Positions 3,697 through 47,400 of a DNA stretch of 64,000 nucleotides are shown piece by piece (the first letter of the stretch is position 1; each line of letters opens with the position of its first letter). Source of the DNA: Pecten maximus. Taxonomy: Eukaryota. The position numbers were made by a program, and so were the translations under genes. The notes beneath the pieces are model-generated. The model was not told where the DNA came from. It saw only the letters and a list, made by a program, of their open reading frames with translations, and made no database searches. The stretch covers positions 11,780,001 through 11,844,000 of the forward strand of contig NC_047019.1 of assembly GCF_902652985.1 (NCBI RefSeq). Direction: 5' to 3'.

Positions 3697-6600
3697 TTAG
3701 CATGAACGTTCCATTTTGTGATAAAACAATAGATACGCGTCGGAGCAAATGGGATACCCATTGTCTGGACTCACTCGCGTGACAATAGAATCTGTGCAAT
3801 GGTACCATGTACTTGAACGGTCACGTGCATGACCACGTGTGTCGTTGTCTCTGTGGGTTGGGGTAGCAAGGTCACGCTGACCTTTCAGTGTCTGTACATA
3901 TGACACATAATGACCACCTTCGATAGTCCCTAGATGGGAAATAATGGCGTATAACTTGTATGTAACTAAGGATTTTTCGCCCTGAAAAAAAGAAAAGAAA
4001 AAAGAAACATTAAAAACATTGCATTCGTTGTCATACATTGGGGAATGATGCAGACAGTTCAAAAGTGCAGCTTATTTAATAAAGCTAGTTTCAACATTAA
4101 ATGTCAGAGGATAAACAAAATAAATGCGTTTTTTTTTTACTTTAGATATCGATATTAACCACTTACTGTATGGAGCTGTATTTTCTTGTTGTATGGAACC
4201 AAGGTTTGTAGTTTTTCTAATTTCACGAGTCCATTACTTGTTCTCACCTTTGAGAAATAGAGAAGCAGCGCATAGAACAGTATATAAATAATTTTTACTG
4301 GGGCCGTCAGTAGCAAATATAGACATTGGTGTTGAGTTCAGGTTGAAATCCCTATCAGTTTACAACATTACATTGACTGATGTTCATGACCACTGAATGT
4401 CATATAAGTATACGTTAAAGGTGTAAGACTTTATAAGGAAAGTACATTTTTACATTGGTGAAGTCTTTATACGGAAAGTACTTTTTTTACATTGGTGAAG
4501 ACTTTATAAAGATAGTACTATTTTACATTGGTGAAGACTTGATAAGGAAAGTACTGGTTTACATTGGTGAAAATACACACCTCTTTAAATCTTGCCAGTT
4601 GAAGGATAAAAATGCTGGGAGCTCTCTCAAGCAGTAACTCTTTGATATACAATTTTCCAGCCCCTGATTTCTGACCTGTAACAGTAAACTACACTTTAAG
4701 CCTATCCACACTTTTAATTCAATTCCTTATCAATAAAATGGGAGATTTCTCCTGGATCGGTGCCAGGACCCAGTAAAGGAGATAGGGTTAGTGTCTTCAA
4801 ACGACGTCTCCTTTGATGCATTCAAAACATTTAAAAAGACTTCATTTCGCGTATTCGTGTCTAACGATTTTTTCGTGGCGGTTTAATTTGGCGATTTGCA
4901 ATCATAAAAGGCATACTGTACCTGTAATTGAAACTATTTCGCGTCGATTAATTTTGCTAATTTTAATCGCCCGCGAAATACGTCCAAAATAATTGCACGC
5001 GAAAGTTCGTTGGTTATTAGTAGTGAAGGAAAATGAGAGCTTGGATTATGCCAAAGATTGTCACTGCAGTATCGAATTGTTGGATATCATTTCTAGTATA
5101 AATTGAACAAAACGTCAGCAATTCAGCCTAGTGACAGTCTGTTACCCAAAATCTCCTTTGAACAAAAACACCGAAATTTACATGTCAAATTTCAGAAGCA
5201 TGGTGTTGGGAAAAGATAAATCCGGACAAGTTACACGCACTAATTTACAATGATCTTGTTTGTACTTAACTGACTATACTTGTTTGATGCTGTATTATAC
5301 CATCCTTGAAGGCGCATTTCCCGCCATTCCTAGCCCACATTATCGTCTTAAGTCTAAAGAGTAGGTAATGTACAGTTTGCTTGCTGGTTTTAACGTTCCG
5401 TGAAGAGCCGAGGTCATTTTGAGGTGGGTATCATTGTAGTAGTTGGTGACAACCTCACTGAACAACAAACGGGAGGCCCATCCAGAGCATTGATCTAACT
5501 GACTGAGCTATCGCGGCCCCTCCTCAAATGTACAAAATAAACATACATATTTATATGTAGATATGATGCCCTTCCTTTTTTGCTGTAATTGGACTTCAAT
5601 ATTATTGCCAAATCTCATAAACTCGTGTCAGAGTTAATGCATTACCTTTACTACACGATCGACACAACATATTGGAATCTGCCAACCTTTCCTTTCGGAA
5701 AAGGAGCTGTATACCATTATCCACAGATTTCTAGAATAATAAATTGAAGAAAAAAAATGTAAATCATCACAACGATATCATTATATACCATCTCAGTCTA
5801 ACCTCTAAGTGCTCATGGTGTTAACATAGAAATCAAAACATATTTTGTACGTGATACAGAACAAGTTTAAATGATAACTATGGTATTCGGAATATGTTTT
5901 TTCTTTGATGCACAAGACCTAATATGTTGAACTTGTTGATTATAGGTTACATTTACAGGTATAATATGCTTAAAAACATTGCACATTTTATTGCATTCGT
6001 TTATTTGATTTCTATTGGAATGGGATAACAGTTTGATGATATGCACATGTTGGCCCTAACTAACCATACATCATGGTCTCATGGTTCATGACGATGGCGC
6101 TTTTGGCGATATCTTTTTTTTTTTTTTAATTTTTTTTTCTTTCACTGGTTAATACAGTCTATGAATGGATTGCAGTTATAGTCATAGTATCTTAAGCAGA
6201 ATATCTGAGTTTCACAATAAAAAACAAAATTGCCCATTTTCGTATGTTTTGATCATTACCTCAGTGACAGGAATACATAACGATGTGAAGTCCTGAAGTT
6301 CGGAACACTCTTTCTGAAAATCAATTAAAAATAATTCTCAATTCTGTGGATCATGTTAAGGAGTCTTTATAGCATTGCCAGCCATGAAAATAAACTATAT
6401 TGAGAAGTCAAAATAGATAGACTTACTTGCATACATTTTGCGCATTCAAATCGATTCTTTATCTGTCCCGTGAATAACTCCATACTGTCTAAAAGATAAA
6501 AAAAAAAAAAAAAAAGAATATTGAAATACACACACACTTTTATAATTAACATATGATATCGAACGAAACGAACATAATGATAAACATATAAATTGTTTTA

Positions 6601-9600
6601 TATTTTACATATCGTATGGAAGAGAAAGGAGCACTTCAATACACATACATTTCTATATATCACATATACATAGCAAGAAGTATTGAAATACACATACATT
6701 TTTATATGAAGCATATTATTATATATATTTTTAAGTATAACAATTTACATATTTTTTATATGGATTATTTGATTTCTAAAATGAGTATTATCATACACAT
6801 ACCAAGTGAGTCTTAATTTTCCTATTTAACCTGTAATATCGAAAAGTAAAGTGTAGCTGGGAAATGCTATCTCAACCACGCTCTGCAGATAGGGCGTAAG
6901 AATTGTACCTGCTGCCCCCATCGCATGATCGTAAGAGGCGACTGAACTTTTGTCACCTTGTCAATGCCTCACTTTGACATTTAGTTGAGCGTTCGCCCCT
7001 GTGAGGAAGGCTTTGGATTCTGTCCCCTGGCCGAGACATACCAGAGTCTTTAAAAATGGTAGTTGCTACTCCTGCTTAGCGCTCAGCATAATAGGAGTAG
7101 GACGATTGGTTCGCCCGTTGTCAGTATAATGTAACCGGGTGGGGTGTCCTGTTGGATGTCTTCGGCAGTTTGCTTCAGTGAGGTAGCACTATAAATCGGC
7201 AAAAGTTCTGGACGTACACAAGGAGACTTAACACGAACATACAGCAGCCTCCCAAAACACATTTATGCACTCACCACATGCATGCATATCGCACTCACGG
7301 GAGGCTGTTCTTAAATGACCTTTTTTTTAAATCATAATCATGCGTGCAAACTATAGACATTAAAGTATGAACCTTTTCCCAGGTCTTCTCTCAAAGCTTC
7401 AATCAGACACAACAGAAAGGAATGGCAGTCGTGCTGTTTCCAGAAGGAAAAGTCATCCCCACTACAGCGGAAAATATACAGATAGAAAAACATTAACCTA
7501 CCCACTGAAATAGTTTAACTATTTTCCTACAATAGTAAAGAGAGACAATACGAACAAAGAACACTTTCACTGTAGGGGAAAACTGTAATTTATAAATTTC
7601 TGCTGATATATAATTCATTATTTGATTTGAATATTCTATGTACATTATTGTATCATAATCATACGTTTGTCACACGATAAATATTGTTTGATAACATGAT
7701 GTTCCAACGAAAACTGATCTATGAATTTGCTTTTATTCTTCAACATAGTTTCTTCCTTTAATCCATGGTTTTTTTCGTTCATCATATGATTTGTACCAAA
7801 AAGATATAAAAATTGCACTGTTTTAATATATAACACATAAACATCGCAGAGGAAGAGCTCACAGATCTAATGTTCGGGATAATTTTATAAGTCTTTTCGT
7901 GACTGCATTTCATATATATTTGATATATTTTGTCATCTCTATTTATCTCTATTAGTATTTTTCGCTGTAAGTAATAATGATTGATATATATATACATATT
8001 GCCACATTATCAGTTACCGTCTGATGACTTCAGCTTGCAATGCTTCTGTACTACTTTGACCCAGTGCACCATTTACATCTACAATGACTTCTAAAAGTGT
8101 GCTTGCCAGATACTTTTGTTTACTCTGAAATAAAATTAAAAAAACAACTTCTATGACACTAATTTGACATGAACAAGCATATGCGTAACATCACAAATTC
8201 ACACGATTTACTAATCTAATTGCTATGGTTATTGATGTGTTGTTTACATTAGTTATTTTAAGGATTTTCTTTGTTTGGACGAATCTATATAGTAGAAAAT
8301 ATCATAACACAACACTAATCAAATTTCAGTTGTTGTTGTTTTATTTAATATCTTTGCTTTCAATTGTGAGGCGGTCAGAAATGGCACCAATACCCCCACG
8401 AAATACTGGAATAGATAATTAAATCAAATAAAACATTTTTATTTTTCTAACATTACTTATTTTTAATTTTTTATTTCTTAATTATTTTTGTACTTTTATT
8501 TTCCCAATACTAGCTATATTTTAATTTATGATTAATTCCAATTATCGATTAATTAGCTTTTTGCAACATAAGATGATGAATATATAATTTTATCATAATA
8601 CTAAGTACAAAGACAAGTTGTTCAGGACTTAAGTGAACGGTTCTGAGGAACATAAAGGTCTGCTCTGAGTGTGAACCTTACCTTACTGCAATAGTCATGC
8701 ACATCCTCAAAAAATCCTGGCGTTTGTGCTAACACCTGTAAAATAATAGGAAAACATTCAGATTACAGACCAGATAAGCTTAGCAATACTGATAAAGCGC
8801 TTTGTGTTTTCAGCAATACGAAATAAAAGGTTTTAACATCATCATCGTCGTTGTCGTCGTCGTCATTATCATCATCGAGGAATATATGTAGTTGTCGTCT
8901 ACAGGTAAATATCTTAAGGTAAATTATTATTTGTAAATCAGTCAGAACTCTTAAGTAGTTAGTACTACAGGTGTTCGACGGAAGTTATATATCAAAACAA
9001 ACATGACGTTTTTGTGATAGTTTATACATCTTTTAAAAATATATGCGTGACAAATTAGTAATAGAATGGTTACCTGTACAACAGCGTTGATGGCGCATGT
9101 CAATTTTGAGTTTTTTAGCCCCTATGTAAAAGAAACAAGTTTATGTTAATATTTCAGGTGAAGGGTAATATCAGATTTTATATTCAGATACAATATGTGT
9201 CTTAAACGTTATCCGTCCATAAATTGTATTGACAAAAAGGAAAACAACACCAAACCAATTCATTCTCTCTTTAGTTCTAAATGTTTAATATGTTACTTTT
9301 CGGAGCCGTTCTATTCTATTTTCGTCATTAGTTGATATATACGTACCCTTATTTCATATCTTTGGCTGTACTGATCATGAACGTCAGGTCCTTGTTTTGA
9401 AAGTACAGCTTCGTGTTCATACCGACGGTGATGTGCTATGAATGCGAAAGGGTTAAGTTTAATTTTCTCCTATATCGTAAAGCATGTATTAGGAGAATTT
9501 TTAGTTGCTTACTGGTATACCGCATACATGATTCCGGCTTTTTGCTAGTTGTTGTCTCGGAGACTATAGTCAATGTTCTGTCGACGTGAAAACTCAAATG

Positions 9601-12469
9601 ATAATGCTCATTTCTACCGGGTGTCTTAAAAACTGTCCCTGTTATAACAACTAAACTAAGAATCCGTAAAGTTTAAGGGTACTTGCTGATGTTAAAGTAT
9701 TTGTTGGAAAACAGAAGATACATACCGTTTAGGATACTTGGCAGGACCTGCTCGTTGTTTTTAACACTATCCTAAAACACAAATATATAGATATCTCAGT
9801 AGACGATTTGCTAACAAATATGTCATTGGTATTGGTGACGTCTGGTAACAGTCAACAAGAAATAGGATACATTCATTTCCTATGGGTTATGGCAAGCCGT
9901 TTGGGTTTTTACCTATTAAATACAGATATCTGTATTCAAAATAAAAATATCATTATTAATATAAAAATTAAAGATATCTTTAATTCAAAGAGAGATATCT
10001 TTAATTTAAATAGAGATATCTTTAATTGAATTAGAGATATCTGTATTTGAGTTAGAGATATCCCTATTTAAAATACAGATATCTCTAATTAAACACGAAA
10101 TAGAGATATCTCTAATTCAAATACAGATATATCTAATTCAATTAAAGATATCTTTATTTCAATTAGAGATATCTGCATTTCATTGTAAATAAATATATCT
10201 GTATTTAAAATAAAGATATCTTTAATTCAAATACAGATATCTCTAATTCAAATACAGATATCTCTAATTCAATTAAAGATATCTCTATTTCAAATACCGA
10301 TATCTCTTATTGTTGTAGAAATACAGATATCTTTATTTTGAATACAGATATCTCTATTTGAATTAAAGATATCTTTATTTGACATGAAATAGAAATATCT
10401 GTATTTAACCATCAAAATAGGAAAAACGACTGCTCCCTTGATTCTCCCTTTTGCGCATGACGGAAGTAAAGCAGTAGTGACGCAAAATGGCGGGAAATGC
10501 AGACCGTGTGCTGCTTTCAATGGTACTGCGTATAGCCGCAACAGTTCGCTCTATTTTCCGTAGAACAGTTGCCATGTTCTGTTCTTTAGAAATCCCCTCC
10601 AAGTAGCAAGTTCATCGGTTTATACCTACATCTCTCATGCATGCATATGGGATCCGGATAGTCCAATTTAATTACAAGCGTTTCGTTAACATTGATCAGG
10701 ATTAGGGAGTAATCATTATTTTCTTTGTGTTTCAATATTAATCTTCGCACTGAGCAAACACGTGTAAATACAGATATCTTTAATTCAAATAGAGATATCT
10801 GTATTTGAAATAGAGATATCTGTATTGCAAAGTAATTGCAGATATGTCTAATTCAATTAAAGATATCTCTATTTAAAATAGAGATATCTTTAATTGAATT
10901 AGAGATATCTGTATTTGAATTAGAGATATCTGTATTTAAAATGAAGACATTTCTATTTAAACAAAATTAAAGATATCTCTATTTAAAAAAGGGATATCTT
11001 TAATTCAGATAGAGATATCTCTATTTTAAATAAAGATATCTTTAATTGGACAAGAATTAAAGAAATCTCTATTTAAAATAAAGATATCTCAATTACAATT
11101 AAAGATATCTGTAATTCAAATAGAGATATCTTAATTTGAAATAGAGATATCTGTCATTTAAAAGAAGATATCTCTATTTTCAGTAGAAATAGAGATATCT
11201 GTATTTAAATTAGACATATCTTTATTTAAATAGATATATATTTATTTAAATTACAGATATCTCTAATTAAATAGAGATATCTTCATTTTAAATAGAGATA
11301 TCTTTAATTAAATAGATATATCTCAATTTCAATTGGTAAAAACCCAAACGGCTTGCCATAATGGGTTGTAATTAAGTGGATGTTGTAATATGTACTTTTC
11401 GATGATTAAGAGACACTTTTCCAGAATTGCCATGGCTGTTTTATTTAACGTATTACGAATCACTATAAATTCATTTTTTATATATATTTATGTATTTATG
11501 ATCTAGCGAAGCCCATGTTTCAATATGAAATCCTAAAATGGCTGCTCCCTTAAATTATTACTTTTATTATTCAAAGAAGTCGTGGTTCAGAAACAATTTA
11601 CAAGTGAAACATGATCATTTGTGGAACATATCTCTTAGCTACTCAGTCGAAATGATGGGCTATTGACCAATACAATTACTCATAACAATCATTCGTATAC
11701 TCTTTATGTCTTTACCATTACCAACAGAAGAACAAATATATAACTCATCTAATATTTGCTTATGGTTATCATTATTGTAAAATTGCTATAGAATGGATAT
11801 TATAGTATATGTTTGACAACAAGTACTTACTATGTTGAGCAGTTTGCCATATCTATGACATATTAAACATTTGTAGCAGTTTGTTAGCCTGCTTCCGTGA
11901 ATTTTACTCTTCATTGTCATTCCTCTCTTACAGTATCGGCAGTGTATGTGACGACATGCTTCAACCAGAACTGGATCCTGTTTGAGTATCGAGTTTGTAT
12001 TGTTCTATTATACACTGAACAAACACAAAAAACAAAACAAAAGCACGATATCTGAAATTGTCTCATAGTGGTGCAATTTAAATTACAATGTAGTTTTATC
12101 GAGATAAGGGGTTAAATTAACATAATCTGATAATCTCGACCACAAAGTCCAAGAAAAAGATAATTTTGCATGAATAGGTATACTGATTATGCAGTTTTTT
12201 GACTGAATAAATCGGCAAAATGCATGAATAAATCGAATATCTATTGCAATATTAAAGAAAAGAAGAGTTTGAGATAATTTTGTTTGCAGTATTTCTTTGC
12301 TCTTCTGCCTAAGAAGGGTTTTTCAGGCACACATAATGCTAAGTTGTCAGTCATTTCTTATCAAATGCATTTTAAATAAAAACAAAGCACATGCCCGATG
12401 ATAAAATTATACACTTACTGTCCCTGCGTCCATTTTACAGAAATCACAGTGCAGCGGTCCGGACGCCAT
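3697..12469 (-). CDS. Gene 1: RING-finger (C3HC4) + USP/peptidase C19 deubiquitinase fusion, ~472 aa, 15 coding exons
   Basis: Phase-consistent GT-AG exons in transcript order: 12419-12469, 11831-11977, 9726-9771, 9513-9638, 9347-9435, 9074-9121, 8682-8735, 8018-8124, 7373-7461, 6427-6488, 6260-6313, 5646-5730, 4581-4675, 4167-4247, 3697-3981. N-terminus MASGPLHCDFCKMDAGT|DPVLVEACRHIHCRYC...YKCLIC is a RING. Cys box GLKNSKLTCAINAVVQ|VLAQTP; QHDCHSFL; CAKC and CRSC zinc pairs; APSIFILQLARF; His box YKLYAIISHLGTIEGGHYVSYV...WYHCTDSIV...AYLLFY. Confidence 0.85.
4422..4572. repeat. ~33-bp tandem repeat, ~4 copies, intronic
   Basis: Unit ACATTGGTGAAGACTTTATAAGGAAAGTACTTTTT repeated in the intron next to exon 4581-4675. 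Confidence 0.8.
5375..5521 (-). mobile_element. Internally deleted tRNA-derived SINE
   Basis: The minus strand starts GGGGCCGCGATAGCTCAGTCAGTTAGA (A-box-like). It ends AAATGACCTCGGCTCTTCACGGAACGTTAAAACC, similar to the tail of the SINE at 49096. Confidence 0.55.
6880..7321 (+). mobile_element. SINE, 5'-truncated and possibly composite, in a gene 1 intron
   Basis: GC-rich block with a tRNA-like remnant (GTTGAGCGTTCGCCCCTGTG...CCCCTGGCCGAG). Its 3' end CTTAAATGACC is shared with the SINEs at 15370 and 49096. Confidence 0.55.
9888..11360. mobile_element. Non-autonomous TIR DNA transposon, IS3EU-like, with AGATATCT subterminal arrays
   Basis: Perfect 26-bp TIR TATGGCAAGCCGTTTGGGTTTTTACC / GGTAAAAACCCAAACGGCTTGCCATA. 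6-bp TSD ATGGGT (9882-9887 and 11361-11366). Dozens of ~20-bp AGAGATATCT repeats on both arms surround a unique core (~10410-10770). Confidence 0.85.
11831..12469 (-). other. RING-HC (C3HC4) domain exons of gene 1
   Basis: The spliced peptide has C-x2-C-x13-C-x-H-x2-C-x2-C-x20-C-x2-C spacing. It is split by a phase-0 intron (donor gtaagt at 12418, acceptor cag at 11978). Confidence 0.85.
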
Positions 12470-12512
12470 TTTAGAATATATCCTAAAATCATTTGTCAAT
12501 ATAATGATATAG

Positions 12513-12571
12513 GAAAACGAAAGTAAAACGATGTTTAATTATGTATTCCATGTTGAAACGAAACCGAAAGT
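12513..12571. promoter_or_regulatory. ISRE/IRF-binding motifs upstream of gene 1
   Basis: GAAAACGAAAGT (12513-12524) and GAAACGAAACCGAAAGT (12555-12571), 45-100 nt upstream of the ATG. Both match the GAAAN(N)GAAA IRF consensus. Confidence 0.7.
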
Positions 12572-15369
12572 ATCACCATGTGTGTGACTGTGCGGTAAAA
12601 CAACCTTGCTGGTTTTCAGAAATAGCTAATTTTATTTTTGCCGACACATCATCACTCTATATATAAATCTACGTCATCACTCTATATATAAATCCACGTT
12701 TTCAAAATTATAAATAGCTCTACCTGTGAGGTATTCTCGGAAGTTGAAATTTATATATCAAGATAGGTTGTTGGATATATAAATACATTAGTCTACCAAG
12801 AAAACTTGTCTTCCAAGAAAACAATTTTTCAATATTATTACAGACGTCATATCCGCCAGGTGCTTGACTCTGTATAGGTTAACAGGTGTACGATTCCATA
12901 AAGCGATAGCTATTTCAATTGTTGTCTGTTCACAGATATAAGTCTAGTTATACCAAATATTGTAACAAGCTGTGAGAAACCTTAGCAGTTTGAGTGTCCC
13001 TTGTATGGTCACCAGGTGCGAAATTTTAAAGTATAAAATACAGTGCATCTTGTTTTCCATACATCGAGTCTATAAACAATTCAACATATAAGATGACGAA
13101 ATGCAAATTTGATGAGACAGTTCAATGGTAACGATCGGTCAGCTAAATGGGCCAATGTATTACACGTAAGGAACGTTTTCTTGAAATGCATTATACAAAT
13201 ATACATAAATGTATTAATTTTTTTATTTATTAATTTATTTATTTTTATAATTTTGTGTATATAATGTATTTCATCTGATAGCATATACCGGTATACATAA
13301 ACACATTGATTTAATTTATCAATAATGAACTCAAAGACTTTATCAATAAAGCTTTTATTTTCCCAATGCACGTATATTAACATACTATATTCTTGTCATG
13401 CCTTCAATACACAATTGATTACGAAGGTAAGGGTACATAATAGGCATAGCGACTACATCAACATATTCAAACTATAGAGTATGTTTACGCACATGCCAAT
13501 ATAGAAATATCAGGCGGCACAAACAAGGAAAGCTGTAAAACACGTGCCATCCCTGTAGATGACGTAAGGATTTATTTATAGTTACAATAGTATTTATTTA
13601 ACTAAGCAGAACATGACATATGAAAACATGCATGCAAAAGTACAGAAAACGTACGTATGCTGATCCTTCTAATCAAATACCCAAACCTCTGAAAATACAT
13701 TGACAACTTAAGGATTTATTTATATTTCTCTTGAACATTTTATAATTCTCATATATGTTGTTGCTTTAATGTATATTAGAAGTTTTTTGTTGATTAAAAA
13801 AAAAGATCACTAAATTAATGCACATATTTTAATATGTTTTTATGATTTCTTTTTACCAATGGCCTCTCCTGGATTTTCACGCTTTCAGTCCCTATCAATG
13901 TTAGCACGACCTATTAGGGATATTCGACAGATACGTGGTATTACTGAATTTTAATTACCAGTGTGTTTGTGGAACCGTTCGTGATAATCTTTGTTATTAT
14001 TACCACACGAGTTTAATATTTGCTATCAAGAACAATTTTAGCGACAATGCATAATAATTTGCGGTATTGTATATGATCAGTGATTGTCTTATATGCTCTT
14101 GTGTTGATCAAATTGAACATATTCCAATTAGGTGCGCATGTATTTCTGCCATTTCTGTAGTATTTGATAAACTGAAATTGTATATATTTCCGTAAAGTTT
14201 GAGGGTACTTGCTGATGTTGTTCAACACTATGAACCACAATACATCTATCAATGTCGATTAAGACTGCGCTTGTCTGCTTTTGACTGGTCCTATGTAGCA
14301 AAACGGTTCATGCCTAAAGTTTTAAAATTAAGAATGAAATCAAAAAAATATAAGTGGGCTTAAATTAATTATAGAAACGGTATTGCTCTTCGCCGAATAC
14401 TTAACAATTCTGAAACTTTTAAAACTTGAATAATTTTACTTACTGGAATAAGGTTAATTTGATGGTATAGTTATCTGTCATAAAAGGTAGGGATTATGGA
14501 AGATCTTATGTATTTTATAAACCTTATAAATATATTGTTGATATATGCTATATATCGTTGGTTAAGGCTTCTCGTTAGCTGTGTAATGTGATAAGAAGGT
14601 TACATGTTAAAAAGGTTAAACAGGAGTGGCATTTACATCATTGTGGAGCGATCATAATTTGCCTTAATATTGTGTGATAGTTGTCCGACAAAATGGAATG
14701 GTATAAACTTTTTTGGTTTATTTTTAAACATATTTTCCTGATACTTACTTGAGGTAATTATCTCCCTTTAACCGACAGGTTTGAATTATGAAGTATGAAT
14801 GTTTGAATGATATTATTTTTCGCATCTATGATCTTGTCAGGGTATCGGGTAGACCAATCACTGCATCATTGAAACGCTCGTTTGAAAGAACTAGATTTGG
14901 TGTAGTGGTGTATACTGTGTGGAGGGCTGGGATTAGCCATTATGTACAATATATGTCCTCAGACAGGAGAGCTCACTTTCCATACATACCATACATACAA
15001 AATCAGCACTTTTTCTTATCGTTCATTTCTCAAAGCAATCGCATATAAGTTTCATATACATTCACTGTTTACTCCTTTTGGTTACCCGAGCTTTATTTTA
15101 AACTTTCTTTTATTTCAGTTCTAGCAATTATTTGCTAAAATCTAGACTTACCATTTACCTAACCTTCTGAGACCTGGGAACTCCTTTTTGGTCGTGGAAT
15201 TATGTGAATTTAATTTATTATAAAATAGCATTGATGAAGAATCAATATAAACTTGTTTTTCTATCAATTGCATACGATATGATAGAGATGTACTATCCAT
15301 AATAAATCGGATTCAAAATAAACGTTTTCTAGCTTTTATAAAACCGTCCCCAGTGAATTGGTATAAGTT

Positions 15370-16426: not shown

Positions 16427-19400
16427 TCATGTAAGATCCTCTATTTGTGGATGAAATATCATTCCTTGTTGCATTGTGACATCCTCTTTCCGACTGTAGA
16501 ACAGTAGATAGGCGTCTCCGTTCGGATTGGTTGTGGGATTGGCTCCAGTTGAGACATGCGTGTCACTACAGCGATACCAGCTGTTTCCTAATCTGACAGT
16601 AGCTGTGTAATGACCTCCATTTATACTTCCGTGGTGGTTTACAACTCCATACAGATCATAAGGTATGCTTTTACACTGTGAAATAAAATATATTGAAATT
16701 GCGGTTTCAGTAAAAGCGATTTGGACGTATACGAACGTCTTGCACATTTATAAGTATATTGTTTTTTCAACATAGGCGCTTTCTTTCGAATAGTTCACGT
16801 GTTTGCAAACGTTCAACTTAAAAATATCAGACGAATTATTAAAAGAAGTGGCAAAAATGCCGACAAAATGTTAAAGGGTCTCTTACTGTGAAGCATCGTA
16901 TTCATTATTTTACAAACATACCTTTTCATCAAGTTTTATTTCATTCGAAAATTTGATTCTTGCGATGTTCTTGCGAATTCTCTTCGTTCTATAATCCATG
17001 TACTTTATAAAGAAAATACACATTCTTTCAACATTCTGTTTAAAACATATATAGAATACAGATGACTGAAGAGAGGTGTTTAAACAGCTTCAACGGTGTA
17101 TAAGGCATGTATAGAACGGATTGGGTCATATTATTCATAAACACTTTGGAATTTAAAAAAAAAATCAAAAAACTAAAAAACAATAAATTTTATCATGGCT
17201 ATAAAGATGAATGAAATATATAATTAAGCAAAATTCTATGTTACCTCCTCGAATCGTCCCATCTGTAACACCAATATCTTAGGAAGTTTTGTAAAGACTA
17301 ATTGCTTCTTTGCTACTGTATCTGAAAAAAGACATTTTGTGGCTACAATTTTATCGCTAATAATGATTAAAAGATAATCTGACGTATCATGTTAATTTTT
17401 TATACTCAATTTGCCAAATATTCAATATGAACTAAAACAAAATATTCGATTCATCACTTCTAACTTCTTACCTAGATGTTTTTCCTCACACATTCTACAT
17501 TGAAGGAGGTTTTTCTCAAATGTTTCCTCACTGCAGAAGTCTTTTATGCATGCATACAGGTTCTATTTTGAAACGAAGATATGATGTAATATAGAATCAT
17601 GTTGATAACAAAAGAAATGGACGCAAAACTATCTTAATGAAACAATTTAGGAGGAACCTTCAATGCAATATATACGCTCCTTAAGATGATAGTTTCATGC
17701 TAACTCTTGCAGTACTGATATCTTGATCTTCTAAGCGTTTGTGTCAAACATAAAAATCGTGATTGTTAATTGATAGTCTACGATGGGCGACAGCGGTCGT
17801 CGTCTCATACACGCTATTAGAAAATATAGAAAGATGTGTGCTTGAAAAAGTATAACATCATGACACTTCGTACAGGCGTGTAAGAAAAATGTTTATAAGA
17901 ACTAGAGGCCCATGGGCCTTAACGGTCACCTGAGATTTGAAATATTTCAGTTAATTAAATTGACCGTTTTTGGCCCAAACCATCAGTCCCTAAGGGTCAG
18001 TCAAGGCCAACATGTGCACATCATCAAACTGTCATCACATACTCGTAATGTTATCCAAATTAGAATTAATTCCAAACGATCGTTAAAAATGTGATTTCCC
18101 TATATAAACTTTAGTAAAGTTTACCCCCTCCCTAGGGGCAAACGTGAAACCACAGGGTGATAAAATCCACAATTTTAGTAAAGCATCTTATACCCTTCCA
18201 TCTATGAAGAGTACCTAAAACTGTATTTGATTCTATATTATTTGGATCGTGAAAAGAAGATTCTTGAAAGTTTAGTCAATGTGAACCAAATTAGAATGAT
18301 TTCCAATGGAAATCAAACAAATCATAGTCTAAAATGTGATTTCTCTATATAAACTATAGTAAAGTTTAGCCCCTCCCCAGGGGCAAACGTGAGTCTCAAG
18401 GGTCATGAAATTCACAATTTCGGTAAACCACCTTAAGACCCTTCCATCTATGAAGAGTGTTTGATTCCACCATATCTCAGAGTAGAGAAGAACATTTTTG
18501 AAATTTCAGTCACTTTGACCCTTTTTAGCCCCACCCATCAGCCCCTGGGGGTCAATTAGGGCAACATATGCATACCATCAAACTGTCATCCTATGCTGAT
18601 AATATAAACCAAGTTAGAACGAATTCCAATAGAAATCCAACAAATAATAGTCAAACATGTGATTTCCTTATATAAACTATAGTAAAGTTTACACCTTTCC
18701 CAGGGGCAAACGCGAGACCCCAGGGTCATGAAATTCACAATTTTGGTAAAGCACCTTAAGAACCTTTCGTCTAAGAACTCCCTGCCAAATTTCTTTGATA
18801 TTTTGAGGTTTTGGAAACGAAGTTGAAAATGTAAATTGTTTAGGGACGCACGACGGACGACGACGGACAAAAGGTGATTAGAATAGGTCACTTGAGACTT
18901 CGTCTCAGGTGACCTAAAAAGTGTACCATGACAAATCGTATACTCAAACGATTGCTACCAAATTCACTAAGATTGCTACATAAAGTTTAGAACGGCAGAG
19001 ACATTTTTAACACTTCTCAGAAACCGAATACATAAGTTTATATATATATATAGGTTTACATGATTGAAACGTTATAGCAAAGTTTGTCCACCAAAGTTGT
19101 GTTGACTCGGCTGATGTTAATACAATTCTCTCCATCTTCGTGAAAATCGATTCAATTTCTTGTCATCTACATGAATATGAATGAATGATGGATCTCTACA
19201 TCTCTTTATTTTTCATATAGGGGAAATGTCAAACAGTGTAGAGTTTGAATGTCAACATTAAACAAATGCTAGGTTCAATTTTTTTTAAAACCCCGACACA
19301 TGATACGAGTACATAGCATCGTAGCATATACATGGGTAAATAAGACCAGTATGAAATCATGGGTAAATTGGACCAGTATGAAATCATGGGTAAATTAGAC

Positions 19401-22400
19401 CAGTATGAAAACAGGGCTAAATTAGACCAGTATAAAATTATGGGTAAATTAGACCAGTATGGAAACATGGGTAAATTAGACCAGTATGGAAATATGGGTA
19501 AATTAGACCAGTATGAAATCATGGGTAAATTAGACCAGTATGAAAATACGGGTAAATTAGACCAGTATGAGATCATGGGTAAATTAGACCAGTATGAAAA
19601 TATGGGTAAATTGGACCAGTATGAAATCATGGGTAAATTAGACCAGTATGAAAACATGGGCTAAATTAGACCAGTATAAAAATATGGGTAAATTAGACCA
19701 GTATAAAATCATGGGTAAATTAGACCGGTATGAAACCATGGGTAAATTTGACCAGTATGAAAACATTGGTAAATTAGACCAGTATGAAAACATGGGTAAA
19801 TTAGACCAGTATGAAAACATGGGTAAATTAGACCAGTATGAAAATATGGGTAAATTAGACCAGTATGAAAATATGGGTAAATTAGACCAGTATGAAAACA
19901 TGGGTAAATTAGACCAGTATGAAAACATGGGTAAATTAGACCAGTATCAAAACGTGGGTAAATTAGACCAGAATGAAACCATCACCTTAAGAAATAAAAT
20001 AATATAAAAGATATAACCTCTTGATTTGCTATTGGCATCAGAAGACTTGTAAAACGCTGTTCATCGGAATATTCCACCTGAGAGAGAAACAAAAAAATTG
20101 TAAAACAAATAGTTATATTGTTACCAAATATTTTTATTTCTATTGTTGCCTTTCAAACAAATTCTAACACATCACTCACTATACATTTGGTCCTTCTGTA
20201 GCATGGTCAAAATCGTACGCCTCTAATCCAGAACTTAGTTACGTTCATGATGGGAACTATTTTCATTTAATTCATTGAATTTAATTGAATTAAATCAATG
20301 TTAATTGATTGAGAATATATTGCTTTACTAATAAACACAAAATGTACTCACGTGATCACATGTGTTATATTTGAATAGGTTCGTCATCATTCCTTCAAAT
20401 ATTTCGCAAGGGTTTCCGTCTATAAACATAGAAATAACTTATTTGTTGTATCTGTAGTTGTGAGGATCATTTTCCGAAGGCAAATTTATGGAAAGAGATG
20501 ATAATCTTCAATTTAATACTACATGGTACATACTGGTAATTCTTATTTCACGGGGAGAAAACATCCTGACTATTTCTACTATATTTAAAACTTAACTTTA
20601 TACGAGGTATATCACTCAGGTTTTACATTTTTAAAGATATGTCTAAATGATTAAAAGCATTAAACAGTTATAAGCAATAAATTATGTATCATTTGCAGTG
20701 CATTTCAAAACACATGATCTAAATCGGGTAGGAGATCCTGTCCCCTGTACTGAATGTCATGGCTTTTATTTTGGTTACTGAAACTCCGTGTTCTGTATCG
20801 AAAATGTCAGACATGTGGGTAAGCTCGGTAGAGGCAACTCCATTACATCAGAATTGCCATCCAGAGCTTACAGTATTTTTTTCTGCACGTACATGTCCTG
20901 GTAGTCATAAATTACCTGGGCCATAGAAAAGAGTATTGACATTATTTAACATTTAGGTCGTTATTGTGTTTTGCTTTCTATAGCAATTCAAAACTGATTA
21001 AATTTTTTAAGCTCTACCGTTGATTAACACATCATTGCGGTTGCTATAAGCGGAGCAGGAAATGCTTGCTATCAAAACGTCTGCTTCCTCTTCATGATTT
21101 GTTTCAATATTTCCTTTTAAGATTATTTATCCATAAGTATACATTGAAACTATTGTAGATTTTTCAACGAAGTACAAACCATTTACATATTATAAATGAT
21201 AGGAAAATATCTCGGAACACATACTGAAAAGCAAATTTGGCGAATCCTCCCTTGTTCAAACAAGACAGGCTCATACTGAACTACATAATCTACGTATATT
21301 GTCGGTGGCAAGCAAAGCTGTATGATTAAAATTGACAAAGTAAGCGCTTGTTGTCTCTCTGTATACTGAAATATGTTACAATTATTAAGATTGATTTACA
21401 AAAACCAACGAATGATATGAACAAAGATATATTAACATACCTGAATCGGCCTGCACGCAGTTAATAAGTGCAAGAAAGAATGCATGACTGTCATCCTGTC
21501 TCCCTATACTAAATGAATCTTCTCTGTAATTGAGAATGAAATTTAACTACACATAAAACTGCCTGCAAAATTTCTGATTAATATCCTGCTCTGCAATCAA
21601 CCATACCACACCATAACGTTAAAAAACCTGTGCAGAATTATATCCTGTAATGGTATTGTACAGGTGGATAGTCGGAGTGCAACTGTATAAGGGCATGATA
21701 TTACGATGTGAACAACGAATCAATCCAATATTAAACCGGATAAACTTTCTGTCTATAAGTGGACGGGCGGACGGACGAACGGATTGATTTCAATATGTCT
21801 CCATAACTAGGACAAAGAAAACAAACTCAATAAAACTAAATATTCCTGAAACACCGTTTGTTAAATGCCAATACACTAGACACACGAACATTATACAGGT
21901 GTGCATACATCAAAGTAGATAAACAGACGTAGTCTCCGGATATGAATATTCTTCCAAATCAAATTCAATGTGATGGATCAATATTTGCATAACTTGACAT
22001 TAATGAACACCTAATGATTTTATGTGTTGTGATGATATCCGATCTGGAGCATCTGGAGAGTTTGAGAGATCACCAACCTTTTGAATACTGAATGAAGTAG
22101 ACTATGCACTATCTCGTAGTAGACGCAACGAGTACCAGGCGTATTTAGCTCAGTCAGTATCTTTTTCAACAGCGAACCACTCCCTTTCTGACACTACAAT
22201 GTAAAAGTTATTTGAATAATTTTCCACTAAATGCACATCGTATCATAATTGTCATAACGCTAACCACTAGATATAAAAAATAGTTCCACTTTCAAGTGAC
22301 AATATTCTAAACAGTTATACTCACATTTTCAAGATAACTTTGTAGCGAAGGTGATTTCCCTAAGACCTGTTAAAACATAGATTCGTCATCATAATGTCGG

Positions 22401-41494: not shown

Positions 41495-44400
41495 TTAGAC
41501 ATCTTGACTTGATTTTGATTTCTTGTAGAACAGTAGGTAGGCGAACGGTGAACAAGGCCACTCCTCATTGACCTCTAACCTTCTGACGTAAGAGTCAGCA
41601 CAGAGGTGCCAAAGATAGTGATTATCCAGGTTCCATCCATTCTTTTTAACATAACACCAGTAATGTCCTCCCTCTAAGTTTCCCTCATGGCAGATAACTC
41701 CGTATAAATCGTAATCCACACATTGCCTGTCATATAGACCCTGTGTAATATTGAAAAAAATATCTTAATTTGCATAAAACACCTTATCACCATGATATAA
41801 TGATGTCGTCTGCTATTTTCTTCATTTTGTAAGAATCGTACAAACTGATATGCCCTTAGCCTGTCCCTTAATCTTGCTGATATATGATCTTGAATTATAA
41901 AAGCTGATTTGAACGGAAGGGATTAAAAAGTAAACATATTACATCTTCAAGACATTTTTTTTCAAAACAATTTTACTTGAAAATATTACATCTTCTGATT
42001 ATTTGTTTCAAAATATGCTATATCTTCAATGCTCTGCCTACCTGTCTACTGACTCTAAGGGAGAGATTGGACGGGTAATGTACACTTTCTTCGTATTTGT
42101 ACAGTTTGCCATATCCATCCTAAGAAATATAACAGTAATACAGACATTTCCAGTACAAATGTAAATACAATTTGTAAGAACAGTTATCTTTTGTAATAGA
42201 TTTGTTATTTAGTATATTCACTTTTGATACAATAGATATGATTTTGATACGCTGTTAACATTTTGTTATAAACCATATATAGATCAAGTCGTGACTTTGT
42301 GTTATGACACTTATTAAGCGAGTTTAAAGTCTTAAGAAAAGTCACATATCAAGTCACTTAACGAGTTCAAGACAGATGAATTTCGACTACAATTTGTAAT
42401 TATTACGCATTGATGACATGATCGTATCACAAGATAAATCATTTTAGTTATGTGATGAAGTTATACTGCTCATTTGATAGTGTTGACACATTGTCTACAT
42501 TATGTTATATGCTAAAAGAACCGGTGATTATTGATATAAGTTTTCAAAACACAATCAAGCCGATGACACGTGATATATATGATGTAAATACCTGTTTAAA
42601 TCTTGCCAACTGTAAAACTAGTATCTCCGGTGGGCTTTTTATTAAACACTGTTTATAAGTCTGCGTGTCTGTAAAATATGTACCAACTCATCAATATAAA
42701 ATAGAAAATGTATAAGCTCTTAAATGCCAATATTGTCATTCAGTTTCAGTGATAGCTTATGTCTCTTGCATCATTTAAAAAGAAAAATCTCATTTTTTAA
42801 GTATAATTTTTATAGATTAGATGTATGCTACTAAAACTGTACTATGCATGTTAACAGGTCTAGTGTCTAAACTCATTTTATCATATATGATACCAATTTT
42901 AATTGTTGTCATACTTTCTTATGTACTCTATGCTATTAAATGTTATTTGTTTAGAATTTTTAAAGGGACACAATATCAAAACAAAATTAAAACTAATTTG
43001 TACGTTCGATAATCTGATCGCCTCAGATACAAATGAATAAGGCATTTAGCGGCAAGGAACATTACCCTGGTATAGGAACGCGGATATATCAATTGATACA
43101 AATAATTTGAGATAAAAACATGTATTAACCTTTATGGTGCAAATTCTTATCCAAACATATCCTGCATGGTACTTCAGCGTCGTCAAATGTTACCATCGCA
43201 TCTAACCGCTCGAGACTGTCTTCAACTGAACGCTACCAAAGTGTATTAAGCAAATGTTAAAATTACATAATGTCCATTTTTATATATAAATATATATTTT
43301 TAGATATTTGAACTAAGTTTGAATAATTAGGATGAACTTACATTTTCACAACGAAATCTTATCCTCTATATTTTGTAGCTTATAACTGGTGAATTTTCAA
43401 CTGGTCATCAGTCAGCGGATATGATGTAACAACAACTGTATGTAATACAACTGAAGAATGTAGATGTGACTTACTTGATTGTCACCAACTGTTAGGAGCA
43501 GGGACCTGATACATTCAGGAGGGCTTTCCTCCACCTGTTAATTTTTGAAATTATATTTAAACAAAGGTTGTCTATCACCCTCCCCCATTTTAAGGTGTAA
43601 AATTGGTACTCAGTGGAGTCGATACTACACAGTCAGACAAAAATAATTTACATTTTGTTTTAATAATAATTTTTGTTTTAAGCAAATAGTGTTGACTGTA
43701 CCATGTTGTTTTTCTATAACAAAAACACACAAAGAACAACGTCTACTGTTAATGTATCTGCATGAAGAGCACATCAAGAGTATTGAACAACTTTACCAAT
43801 ATTTTATCATACAATGATAAGATATCAAACACAACGAAATTATGAATAAAAAACAGTTAAACACGCATTCTTAAATTCAAAGATACTAACGTGGTCACAA
43901 GTCGAATATCTTAATATGCTTCGTGCATGCCCATCAAACAGCGATGTAGACCCTATAACAGTCAACACAACGCTAATCAATACTTGCAGAAAACATTTAA
44001 TCTAAATAATAAATTACACGAAACAAAATCATGATTTTGTTTATATAAGCACCTGATAAATTACAAAAAGTACGATTAACATGTATAGTTCCTTTCTCAA
44101 AATACGCAACTACTGAACTGTAACTATGTTGTAATGATTTCAACATACTTCTAAATGCAGTTAAGAGGAAAGATATGATAGACGTCACTGACGTTGTGAT
44201 AGAATATCTCTCCCCCAGACTGCATTACTACCGATATAAATAATTCCAAAACTGTTCAGTAGTTATATTTTCATCTAAGAAATCCTTATTTGAAATGTTT
44301 CCGTATTGAATAAAGCTATGTTAAACGTTAACGTTAACGTACATATTTTTTTCCAATTTTCGTGTGAAATGAAGGTTAATTTTTTGGAAATGCTGCTTGC

Positions 44401-47400
44401 AAATCAGAATCATCAATGGGTAGATGTTCAAAGCACTCAAGAAACGTTGCCCAACATGATGCAAAAATGACGTCACAATAATAATTATTATTCACAGTCA
44501 TGTGAAAGCCAAACGTTATTGATATAGAAATATTTGAGTGACAACAACAACAACAAAAATAAATAAATAAAAAATATGATTAAATACACATTGTGCAAGT
44601 GTAGATATTACATTGTGTTTTGCATAAGGACTGCACTACCTAGGACACAGTCTCCATAGCTACTGTCACTAAACATTGGCGGAAAGTTAAAAAGAAAATG
44701 AGTATACTCATTCATTGTGCATGTACCTTTAATTTCTTCATCCAATACATTCATCAAACACAGATATAAAGAGTGGCAGTCGTTCTGGATTCCACTTTGG
44801 TAACACTCATCCCTACAAATATATATACATATATATAACGAATTGGCCCCAGTATAGTAAAATCCAAAACCAGTAAATCACTGTCATTCTATTTCTAGAT
44901 AAATACAACATAATATATGCATATACCTTTCTGACATAGACTTTTGTAGGTCGACAACAAGATTATACAAGTCTTCATCTGTATGGCCTCTACCGTACTT
45001 GGCATCATTGATCTCCACAAATAGTTTTATTAAAGTGTTTGCTACATGGTTATTCTGTAATGAGAGTAAATTTATACCAATCGCATTATATATTCGCGTT
45101 TTCACACTAATAGTCGCATGGAGCTTTCCTGATTGAAAATATTATGTGTTATCAACATGAGAGAGTGATAAGCCTACAAGTTATGAGATATAATATACAT
45201 GATATGATTTCATTTTTATGGTAATTACAATATCAGTAGTGGCAGAACGGTGTAGTAGTAGAACCAGTAAACGTTAACACTCAATTAACTGGCAAATATT
45301 GTTTTACTTCACATAATTTCAATTATTATTAAACTTACTGAATATTTAACCGTTATTTTTTCGTAAAATAGATATATTTTGTACGTTCAAGTTTAAAACG
45401 CATTTGTGTGAGGCATCCTACCTGATTGTTGGAGAGAAGCTTGTCGATGAAACCGGGTGTCTGTGCTAAAACCTAAAAGTCAGAAAGGTAACACATACCT
45501 TTATCAAACAAATATGACAGTATAAAAACTTATATCTGGTACATTTTCTAACGAAATTAACTAAATAGACAAGATGATATATTCATCGTGAACAGCCTAT
45601 ACGAACTTAAAATTATATTATAGTAATGATTTCAAAATAGTCAAAGAACAGAAGGCATATTGATTTCAATGTTTTTCTTATGATTCGTTATTACGGCATG
45701 ATTTATAAAAACGTACCTGAATGAGTGATGATAGGTAGCATGAGCTTGACTCTATATTTGGAAGGCCCTGTGAGAAAGTTAAGGAGGAAAACAAGGCATT
45801 CAAATCTTTATTAGAATTAATCAGGATTGATTAATTGGTTTAACAATGCAAAGGATACTCTTATGAGATCTCCATCGCTTTTGTCTGTATTGTCAACTTT
45901 CTTTTCATTGTTTGTGTGATCGAAAGATTCTCGTAATCCTGAAATAAGAGAACAAAACATGTTTAACTTTTGTTTCTTGAAACACACTATCAGTTTTATT
46001 AGTAACCTTATACACATTGTAACAATAAGTTACTGAAAATATTGGATCTGAGAATTTAACTGAATAACCTTGTTTGCGCCTTACAAACACAATTTACTGT
46101 ATATCATTCATTTCCGTTCGACTTGATTTAATCGCTTTGATGCATTGCCATACTTCATACCTTTGTCCTCTGAAGCAGTGTCATCATTTGGCAGTTTCAA
46201 CTGATGTGTAGTATTTCTAAGCTTGTCATCCTGTTATGATAATATGGATTTTTTTAAAATCTAATGTATGATGTTTTCTGGCAAATATCCAAAGCATTAA
46301 GAAAAAATAAGCAAGCGAATTAATTATGTTTCAATACAAGGGAAATGTGATTTTTGAATACATTGTTTGGTTTAAAATTAAAATCCTAATTAAGGATAAA
46401 TTATCTGAGCAAATATTTGAAAACAAAGTTCAAAATAACTTATCAATTTATCAAAATATTACCTTAAAATTTTAAAGGATAAAAAATATTTCTTTTTATT
46501 ACGGAGCAATTAACTAAGTATCGGTGTGTTTGTAGCGAACCTTCATATTATATACATATAAGTAAGCCTTCTGGAGTTATCTCCCATATGCTCTACTGAT
46601 CTGACAGCTGTGATATACATATACATATACATGCGATCCCCTCCCGTCCTTACGGGAAATATACTATTTTACCGATTTCTGGTCACAATCTTTATCCAAG
46701 GGTTGATGGCCTTCTCGTGGTGAAGATGGTGGTTTTAAGTCTGATTATGTACATGGACATGAAAAAATAAACACACAGAAATAAACATGCTATGTTCTAT
46801 ACACAAGTTAAACAAACGTGTTTAGCAGGCTCGTTTTTTCTTATATTTACTGAAATATGTTGCATCTGTTTATACATTCTAAGTGCCTTTCACTTGACTG
46901 TGAGTCTTTTGTAATATCCGTTTTTACTGATATTCTCATTTGATCTCTAACAGTTATTTGTGTCACTATTTACAATTTTGATTTCTTTCTTTTGAATAAT
47001 GTAATCACACAGTTTAAAATTAACCTCTTTGTTCTGTCTCCTTGTCGATATCTTTCATCTGTTTACGTTCCACTTCGTCCGCTTCAGACGAGTTCAATTC
47101 CTGTTTATACAGTTTAGATTAACTAATTGGATTAATTGATATTGAATATTTTGACATGGCAAGATATCATCTCATTTTTATTTTAATAAATATTTGGTTT
47201 TAATATATATCAAGGATATAACTGTAATAGAGTTGATCTGGGTATTAGCATATAATGATTTTGAATTAAGATACATAAACAAAGGATTAAAAAAATACAA
47301 ACCATACGTTAGATGTTGGAATCAAACTATATTTTTCTATTGTTTGACGGGAAGATGTTATGCATTAAATCAATGGATATATTACATACACTAGTATCTG

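What the first reader, a model, noticed from the sequence alone, without database searches (positions are those of the whole stretch)
3697..12469. RING finger and USP catalytic domain in one polypeptide (possible E3 + DUB bifunctional enzyme)
Seen: a complete C3HC4 RING (CDFC..CRHIHCRYC..CLIC) splices in frame, through three short linker exons, to a USP domain with Cys and His boxes. There is no stop codon in the spliced frame. Established: RINGs recruit E2~Ub and USPs remove ubiquitin; to my knowledge no human USP carries a RING, and the best-known dual editor, A20, uses OTU + ZnF. Inference: a compact chain-editing or self-regulating ligase/DUB.
Basis: partly seen in the sequence, partly recalled or inferred. 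Interest (0 to 1): 0.85.

Follow-up and report, generated by a model that had tools for sequence, protein, structure and literature searches.

The report
RING finger fused to scallop deubiquitinase
A king-scallop gene really does encode, in one expressed and evolutionarily conserved protein, a RING-type zinc finger (the hallmark of ubiquitin ligases) joined to a ubiquitin-removing USP protease, an unusual and uncharacterised pairing whose ligase activity is still unproven.

Summary
On the minus strand, 14 coding exons (12469 to 3697) have GT-AG introns throughout. They read in frame to 430 aa: a C3HC4-pattern finger (residues 8-57), a 45-aa linker and a full USP domain (Pfam UCH, E=1.5e-36).

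Spliced transcript contigs from four runs in three studies carry the questioned 11831/9771 junction, together with the next five junctions, in one contig per run.

The model equals RefSeq XP_033739906.1 ("USP2-like", Pecten maximus), so the gene is already predicted. No RING is annotated on it.

The Mizuhopecten yessoensis orthologue keeps all eight metal ligands, although the finger is only 36% identical and the linker 17%.

The finger exon occurs once in the genome. Two neighbouring USP paralogues lack it.

Pfam RING models stay below threshold, so this is a divergent RING-type finger. A ZnF-UBP origin is not supported.

E3 activity could not be tested here. The hydrophobic E2-contact positions are conserved, but the canonical linchpin position is not.

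Two ISRE-like motifs lie 44-107 bp upstream of the ATG, which hints at control by IRF factors.

Verdict: a real, lineage-restricted new domain variant of a USP. The bifunctional E3/DUB reading is plausible but unproven.

The parts
12419..12469 (-). Coding exon 1: start codon and the first RING ligand pair (C8, C11)
   Evidence: Sequence and GT donor. Identical to the N-terminus of P0151. The contig of run X1 runs 53 nt beyond exon 2, which fits this exon (indirect).
11831..11977 (-). Coding exon 2: the rest of the RING-type finger (C25, H27, C30, C33, C54, C57)
   Evidence: Weak Pfam matches to RING families only. Covered by RNA contigs in 4 runs. Found once in the genome.
9726..9771 (-). Coding exon 3: linker
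   Evidence: The joints 9771/11831 and 9435/9726 are present in contigs of 4 runs. Phase check.
9347..9435 (-). Coding exon 4: linker
   Evidence: Joints. Phase check.
9074..9121 (-). Coding exon 5: USP Cys box (oxyanion Asn115, catalytic Cys120 at 9097-9095)
8682..8735 (-). Coding exon 6: USP domain
   Evidence: RNA joints. Match to P0001.
8018..8124 (-). Coding exon 7: USP domain
   Evidence: RNA joints..
7373..7461 (-). Coding exon 8: USP 'QHDCHSF' motif
   Evidence: RNA joint 7461/8018 and a contig piece at 7373-7462. Pfam UCH.
6427..6488 (-). Coding exon 9: first CxxC of the USP zinc ribbon
   Evidence: Protein-guided mapping and splice sites.
6260..6313 (-). Coding exon 10: USP domain
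5646..5730 (-). Coding exon 11: second CxxC of the USP zinc ribbon
4581..4675 (-). Coding exon 12: USP domain ('LQLARFKE')
4167..4247 (-). Coding exon 13: USP domain
3697..3981 (-). Coding exon 14: His box (His360 at 3912-3910, Asp400 at 3792-3790) and the stop codon
   Evidence: Pfam UCH E=1.6e-12 on this exon alone..
12513..12576 (.). Two ISRE/IRF-element-like motifs (GAAAACGAAAGT and GAAACGAAACCGAAAGT on the + strand), 44-107 bp upstream of the ATG. Putative promoter elements.
   Evidence: there are 15 such cores in 64 kb, and 0.11% of random 120-bp windows hold two. Their function is inferred, not shown.

Best explanation
Shown: this is one real, transcribed, single-copy gene of the king scallop. 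It encodes an N-terminal divergent C3HC4 RING-type finger, then a poorly conserved linker of about 45 aa, then a compact USP cysteine protease with all catalytic motifs. The same architecture is kept in another scallop subfamily. Inferred mechanism: the RING binds an E2~ubiquitin and acts as a ligase module, while the USP domain on the same chain removes or trims ubiquitin. That would keep the enzyme from tagging itself for degradation, or would edit the chains it builds. In effect, an E3-DUB pair that usually works in trans is here fused in cis. The ISRE-like promoter motifs and the surrounding cluster of USP and RING genes suggest a role in inducible innate-immune signalling.
For: There are 14 in-frame exons with GT-AG introns and no internal stop. 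Six consecutive splice joints, including 11831/9771, lie in one contig per run in 4 runs from 3 studies, one of which is a recorded RNA-Seq library. The genome holds no retrocopy, since the RING exon and the last exon are each found once. The model is identical to XP_033739906.1. The orthologue XP_021362760.1 of Mizuhopecten yessoensis keeps 8 of 8 ligands, with identity of 36% in the finger, 17% in the linker and 65% in the USP domain. The C3HC4 pattern is far beyond chance. The USP domain scores Pfam E=1.5e-36, and Asn115, Cys120, His360 and Asp400 are conserved. The hydrophobic positions that contact E2 in known RINGs stay hydrophobic in both species: C1+2 is F/V, C2+2 is M/I, C6+4 is M/M and C7+1 is L/L (read against established RING-E2 structures). 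Protein-language-model neighbours of residues 1-70 are all RING families, and structure neighbours are cross-brace fingers (leads only). For the ISRE-like motifs.
Against: No Pfam RING model reaches its threshold. The best scores are 14.4 bits on exon 2, and 8.4 bits for zf-RING_5 across the whole finger of the orthologue. The residue just after the last ligand, which is the usual Arg/Lys 'linchpin' that activates E2~Ub, is His in one species and Gly in the other; a conserved Arg sits one position later. The AlphaFold model gives pLDDT below 50 for residues 1-116. No E2-binding or activity test was possible. M. yessoensis also has a predicted isoform that starts in the middle of the RING, so the finger may be dispensable for some functions.
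Confidence: 0.45

Rival explanations
1. The fusion gene is equally real, but the RING-type finger has no ligase activity. It is a zinc-stabilised docking module that brings the protease to a partner RING E3, an E2 or a substrate, as the inactive RINGs of BARD1, MDMX or BMI1 do, and as ZnF-UBP fingers assemble Ubp8/USP22 into their complex. It could, for example, pair with one of the RING proteins encoded next door.
For: The finger is too divergent for Pfam RING models. The canonical linchpin position is not basic. RING-like genes lie in the same cluster. Accessory fingers of known USPs are non-catalytic (established knowledge).
Against: The hydrophobic E2-contact positions are conserved between two species that share only 36% identity in this region. 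No partner has been identified.
Confidence: 0.35
2. The finger is not a RING but a degenerate ZnF-UBP inherited from a USP22/27/51/Ubp8-type ancestor, in which a ZnF-UBP precedes the USP domain.
For: Whole-protein language-model neighbours are ZnF-UBP+UCH clusters at a score of 0.90. NCBI named one isoform 'USP27-like'. There is a short local likeness between Y-x-C-L-x-C-G and the W-x-C-L-x-C-G of ZnF-UBP.
Against: Pfam zf-UBP gives no match at E<=10, although it finds 13 of the 58 nearest USPs. A zf-UBP profile built here scores the two N-termini at 5.5 and 3.6 bits, and hhalign gives a probability of 9.9% over 15 columns. The ligand order and spacing are those of a C3HC4 RING.
Confidence: 0.06
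3. The fusion is an artefact: two neighbouring genes joined by read-through or chimeric assembly, or a decaying pseudogene.
For: The exon 1 to exon 2 joint was not among the joints listed, since 17 rows were not shown. The contigs are assemblies, not single molecules.
Against: The same six joints lie in one contig in each of 4 runs from 3 studies. The linker exons contain no start codon, so the USP part has no start of its own. The frame is intact over 14 exons. The architecture and the ligands are conserved in a second genus.
Confidence: 0.04

Closest known systems
A20/TNFAIP3 (a ubiquitin-editing enzyme)
   Same: One polypeptide that both removes and adds ubiquitin, working in inducible innate-immune signalling. 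This is a likeness in proposed function only.
   Different: A20 uses an OTU protease and a ZnF4 ligase. This protein has a USP protease and a RING-type finger. There is no homology, and activity is unproven here.
ZnF-UBP-USP enzymes (USP22/USP27X/USP51, yeast Ubp8, USP16/45)
   Same: An N-terminal zinc finger followed by a USP core of similar size. They are the nearest whole-protein neighbours by language-model features, and USP16 is the best solved-sequence match.
   Different: Their finger is a ZnF-UBP (PF02148). That family was tested and not found here.
Compact USP cores (USP2, USP8, USP21)
   Same: The catalytic domain aligns with them at E of 1e-13 to 1e-15, and RefSeq names the protein 'USP2-like'.
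   Different: The similarity is weak and there is no clear orthology. None of these carries a RING.
E3-DUB pairs that work in trans (for example MDM2 or ICP0 with USP7, NRDP1 with USP8)
   Same: A RING ligase is coupled physically to a USP that protects it from self-ubiquitination. This is the logic proposed here (established knowledge, not tested here).
   Different: Those are two separate proteins. Here the two domains are fused in one chain.
BRAP/IMP (RING plus ZnF-UBP)
   Same: It combines a RING with a module typical of USPs.
   Different: BRAP has no USP catalytic domain.

Membership tests
USP / peptidase C19 (Pfam PF00443 UCH) | Profile match above the curated cut-off across the whole domain | tested here: met
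   126.7 bits against a cut-off of 23.9, residues 111-423 on profile positions 1-254 of 254. The last exon alone gives E=1.6e-12.
USP / peptidase C19 (Pfam PF00443 UCH) | Cys box with the catalytic Cys and the oxyanion Asn; His box with the catalytic His; the downstream Asp | tested here: met
   Asn115, Cys120, His360 and Asp400 are invariant among the six scallop proteins. His360 is invariant, and Asp400 is at least 90% conserved, among 60 USPs.
USP / peptidase C19 (Pfam PF00443 UCH) | Ubiquitin (or ubiquitin-like) hydrolase activity | not testable with these tools
   Needs a Ub-AMC or Ub-PA assay.
RING finger, C3HC4 type | Eight ligands in the order and spacing C-x2-C-x(9-39)-C-x(1-3)-H-x(2-3)-C-x2-C-x(4-48)-C-x2-C | tested here: met
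   C8, C11, C25, H27, C30, C33, C54 and C57. The pattern matches in both orthologues, in 9 and 4 of 200,000 shuffles, and in 0 of 155 other session proteins.
RING finger, C3HC4 type | Match to a curated RING profile above its cut-off | tested here: not met
   The best is zf-C3HC4_2 at 14.4 bits (cut-off 27) on exon 2. zf-RING_5 gives 8.4 bits over the whole finger of the orthologue. Nothing was reported for P0151.
RING finger, C3HC4 type | Ligands kept by selection in relatives | tested here: met
   8 of 8 ligands are identical in M. yessoensis, against 36% identity in the region.
RING finger, C3HC4 type | Cross-brace two-zinc fold | tested here: inconclusive
   AlphaFold pLDDT is below 50 for residues 1-116. 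The ESM Atlas model of residues 1-70 resembles B-box, PHD and RING models at a TM-score of 0.5-0.65.
RING finger, C3HC4 type | Basic or Asn 'linchpin' right after the last ligand, and E2 binding with ligase activity | tested here: inconclusive
   The position after C57 is His in one species and Gly in the other, and a conserved Arg lies one residue later. E2 binding could not be modelled, because every E2 gene found in the genome is split by introns.
ZnF-UBP (PF02148) | Profile match to the family | tested here: not met
   No Pfam match at E<=10. The local profile gives 5.5 and 3.6 bits, and hhalign gives 9.9%.
A20-type ubiquitin-editing enzyme | OTU protease domain plus A20-type zinc fingers | tested here: not met
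   Pfam finds only UCH families. The likeness is functional and hypothetical.

The most novel reading that the evidence does not exclude
This is a true natural RING-USP bifunctional enzyme. It would be an IRF-inducible scallop protein whose RING builds ubiquitin chains with an E2, while its own USP domain edits them or strips them from itself. That would be the first described case of a RING ligase and a USP protease working in cis.
Probability: 0.3. Interest if true: 0.75.

Novelty: new variant of a known kind. Interest (0 to 1): 0.45.

Why it matters
RING ligases and USP proteases are usually separate proteins that find each other. Many E3-DUB pairs are known, and the DUB in them often shields the ligase from self-destruction. 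A natural fusion of the two, kept across scallop subfamilies, argues in the manner of a 'Rosetta stone' fusion that such coupling is selected for. It would also give a compact one-protein system in which to study how ligation and removal are balanced. If the ISRE-like promoter motifs are functional, it would add a new kind of regulator to the poorly known antiviral signalling of bivalves. The importance is limited for three reasons. The gene appears restricted to scallops. The finger is divergent. No activity has been shown.

Tried and rejected
Orthology and synteny rest on proteins and accession order only.
2. The spliced model was searched exon by exon, by reference. My own joined sequence was not sent to any search. 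Full-length work used the database protein P0151, which a search returned and which proved identical to the model.
3. AlphaFold2 on a six-sequence alignment gave no usable model of the finger, so no fold search was run.
4. An E2 for a complex prediction could not be obtained as an unaltered reference, because all UQ_con matches in the genome are partial exons.
5. The ZnF-UBP origin was tested and not supported.
6. Word-indexed searches with P0001, with the RING region of P0151 and with alignment A1 found only the scallop proteins and one 28%-identical fragment. The exhaustive search with the last exon found one close cluster only. Word sensitivity and length limits mean this does not prove absence elsewhere.
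7. Pfam on the 58 nearest long USPs found 13 with zf-UBP and none with a RING.
8. Literature searches for a natural RING-USP fusion and for the accession numbers found nothing relevant. Subscription journals are not covered.
9. The very deep RNA signal at 6899-7296 is not an RNA gene, with no Rfam or tRNA match. It is a high-copy dispersed repeat.
10. A strict kappaB consensus (GGGRNWYYCC) occurs nowhere in the window.

Full report
**What is in the sequence.**
The window matches the Pecten maximus assembly. The genome handle has 918,306,378 bases in 3,983 contigs, exactly the figures published for that assembly (PMC7191990). The window is contig 5, 11,780,001-11,844,000.

On the minus strand I read exon 1 (12469-12419). 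It holds the start codon and the first Cys pair. Exon 2 (11977-11831) holds the remaining six ligands. Two short linker exons follow (9771-9726 and 9435-9347), then the 48-nt Cys-box exon (9121-9074). The last exon (3981-3697) carries the His box and the stop.

The remaining exons were placed by mapping a related protein onto the window and reading the splice sites. A local per-exon phase check, which carried only split codons across joints, gives:
- 14 exons and 13 GT-AG introns;
- 1293 nt, which is 430 codons plus the stop;
- no internal stop.

I did not send my own joined sequence to any search tool.

**Transcript evidence.**
One search for runs and one laying of contigs on 6700-12650 were allowed. 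In all four runs laid (three studies, one of them a recorded RNA-Seq library), a single contig per run carries six consecutive joints: 11831/9771, 9726/9435, 9347/9121, 9074/8735, 8682/8124 and 8018/7461. Each joint has GT..AG ends on the coding strand.

The exon 1 to exon 2 joint was not among the rows shown. In run X1 the contig extends 53 nt beyond exon 2, which matches exon 1 plus two bases, so the support for that joint is indirect.

The contigs cannot come from a processed DNA copy. The RING exon and the last exon each occur once in the genome.

**Identity with a database protein.**
An exhaustive search with the last exon found one close cluster. Following it led to XP_033739906.1, [quoted passage not shown], 430 aa (P0151). 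It is letter for letter the model above.

So the gene is already predicted in RefSeq. Its precomputed domains list only UCH families, and no RING is annotated.

**Is the N-terminal finger a RING?**
Evidence for:
- The ligands C8, C11, C25, H27, C30, C33, C54 and C57 fit the C3HC4 order and spacing.
- The pattern matches both scallop orthologues.
- In the Mizuhopecten yessoensis orthologue (P0154, XP_021362760.1, 433 aa) all eight ligands are identical. Identity is only 36% in the finger and 17% in the linker, against 65% in the USP domain.
- Positions that contact the E2 in known RINGs stay hydrophobic in both species.
- Language-model neighbours of residues 1-70 are all RING families. The Atlas model resembles cross-brace fingers. 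These are leads only.

Evidence against:
- No Pfam RING model reaches its cut-off.
- The canonical linchpin position is His in one species and Gly in the other.
- AlphaFold gave no confident model of residues 1-116.

I therefore call it a divergent RING-type finger.

The main alternative is a decayed ZnF-UBP. Whole-protein neighbours of the USP22/Ubp8 type suggested it. It is not supported. Pfam zf-UBP is silent, a zf-UBP profile built from 12 session proteins scores 5.5 and 3.6 bits, and hhalign gives 9.9%.

**The USP domain.**
Pfam UCH covers residues 111-423 end to end, at E=1.5e-36. Asn115, Cys120, His360 and Asp400 are conserved, as are both CxxC pairs of the zinc ribbon.

The closest solved sequences are USP16, USP2, USP8 and USP21, at E of only 1e-13 to 1e-16. 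It is therefore a divergent, lineage-specific USP with no clear human orthologue.

**Distribution and context.**
- The finger exon is unique in the genome.
- The window holds two more diverged USP paralogues on the same strand, with last exons at 16490-16666 and 41513-41743. They lack the RING core motif.
- The paralogue at 41513-45924 is the orthologue of M. yessoensis OWF45889. That gene lies on the same scaffold as OWF45891, which is the RING-USP. The cluster therefore predates the split of the two scallop subfamilies (PMC7191990).
- Among the 58 nearest long USPs, 13 carry a ZnF-UBP and none a RING.
- Word-based searches found no further relatives.
- Literature searches found no described natural RING-USP fusion.
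- I could not run an architecture query on InterPro, so I cannot exclude that the combination exists uncharacterised elsewhere.

**How it most likely works.**
Shown: one conserved, expressed chain with a RING-type finger, a flexible linker and a catalytically complete USP.

Inferred, and my preferred reading (0.45): the finger recruits an E2~ubiquitin, and the USP in cis strips or edits the product. This is the fused form of the many E3-DUB pairs that work in trans.

Nearly as likely (0.35): the finger is only a docking module.

A predicted M. yessoensis isoform starts in the middle of the RING, so a RING-less form may coexist.

Two ISRE/IRF-element-like motifs lie 44-107 bp upstream of the ATG. 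Only 0.11% of random 120-bp windows hold two. Similar motifs mark other gene starts in the cluster, which hints at inducible immune regulation. This is inference only.

**Limits.**
- E2 binding could not be modelled, because every E2 gene found is split by introns.

**Verdict.**
This is a new domain variant of a known enzyme kind, restricted to scallops as far as could be seen, and already present in RefSeq as an unremarked prediction.

Noticed in passing
window 16487-21540 and 41513-45924, minus strand: Two further diverged USP paralogues lie in tandem with the RING-USP gene, at about 30-35% identity in the last exon. Neither shows a RING core motif. The second is the orthologue of M. yessoensis OWF45889/XP_021362847, so the cluster is syntenic between the two scallops.
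   Followed up: partly
window 12513, 12560, 26074, 40176, 40843, 40985, 49741, 50189, 52437: GAAA-CG-AAA type ISRE/IRF-element-like motifs recur near likely gene starts across the cluster. A strict kappaB consensus (GGGRNWYYCC) is absent from the whole window, which bears on note s1-792435.
   Followed up: partly
window 6900-7296 (intron 8): A dispersed repeat of 340-400 bp has thousands of candidate copies in the genome at 87-92% identity. Its summed depth in transcript contigs is extremely high. It has no Rfam or tRNA match and looks like a SINE or another small mobile element.
   Followed up: partly
window about 9900-11350 (intron 2): An AT-rich tandem or interspersed repeat fills much of the 2059-bp intron between the RING and the linker exons. 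Related but non-identical copies appear in transcript contigs.
   Followed up: no
window 47577-48284, minus strand: A 235-aa open frame made of about 13 tandem copies of a 10-residue unit (QLQGTSNDKQ). It lies upstream of the third USP paralogue and may be part of that gene's N-terminal region.
   Followed up: no
window 59915-60106 and 62356-62550, plus strand: Exon-like frames with RING-like second halves (C-x4-C-x2-C ... C-x2-C). They belong to the 'triple RING-like' gene of note s1-792310. RING genes thus sit beside the USP cluster.
   Followed up: no
P0001 / XP_021362761.1 (M. yessoensis isoform X2): This predicted isoform starts at a Met inside the RING and lacks the first six ligands. 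The same Met is present in P. maximus (residues 37 and 39), so a RING-less isoform is conceivable there too.
   Followed up: no
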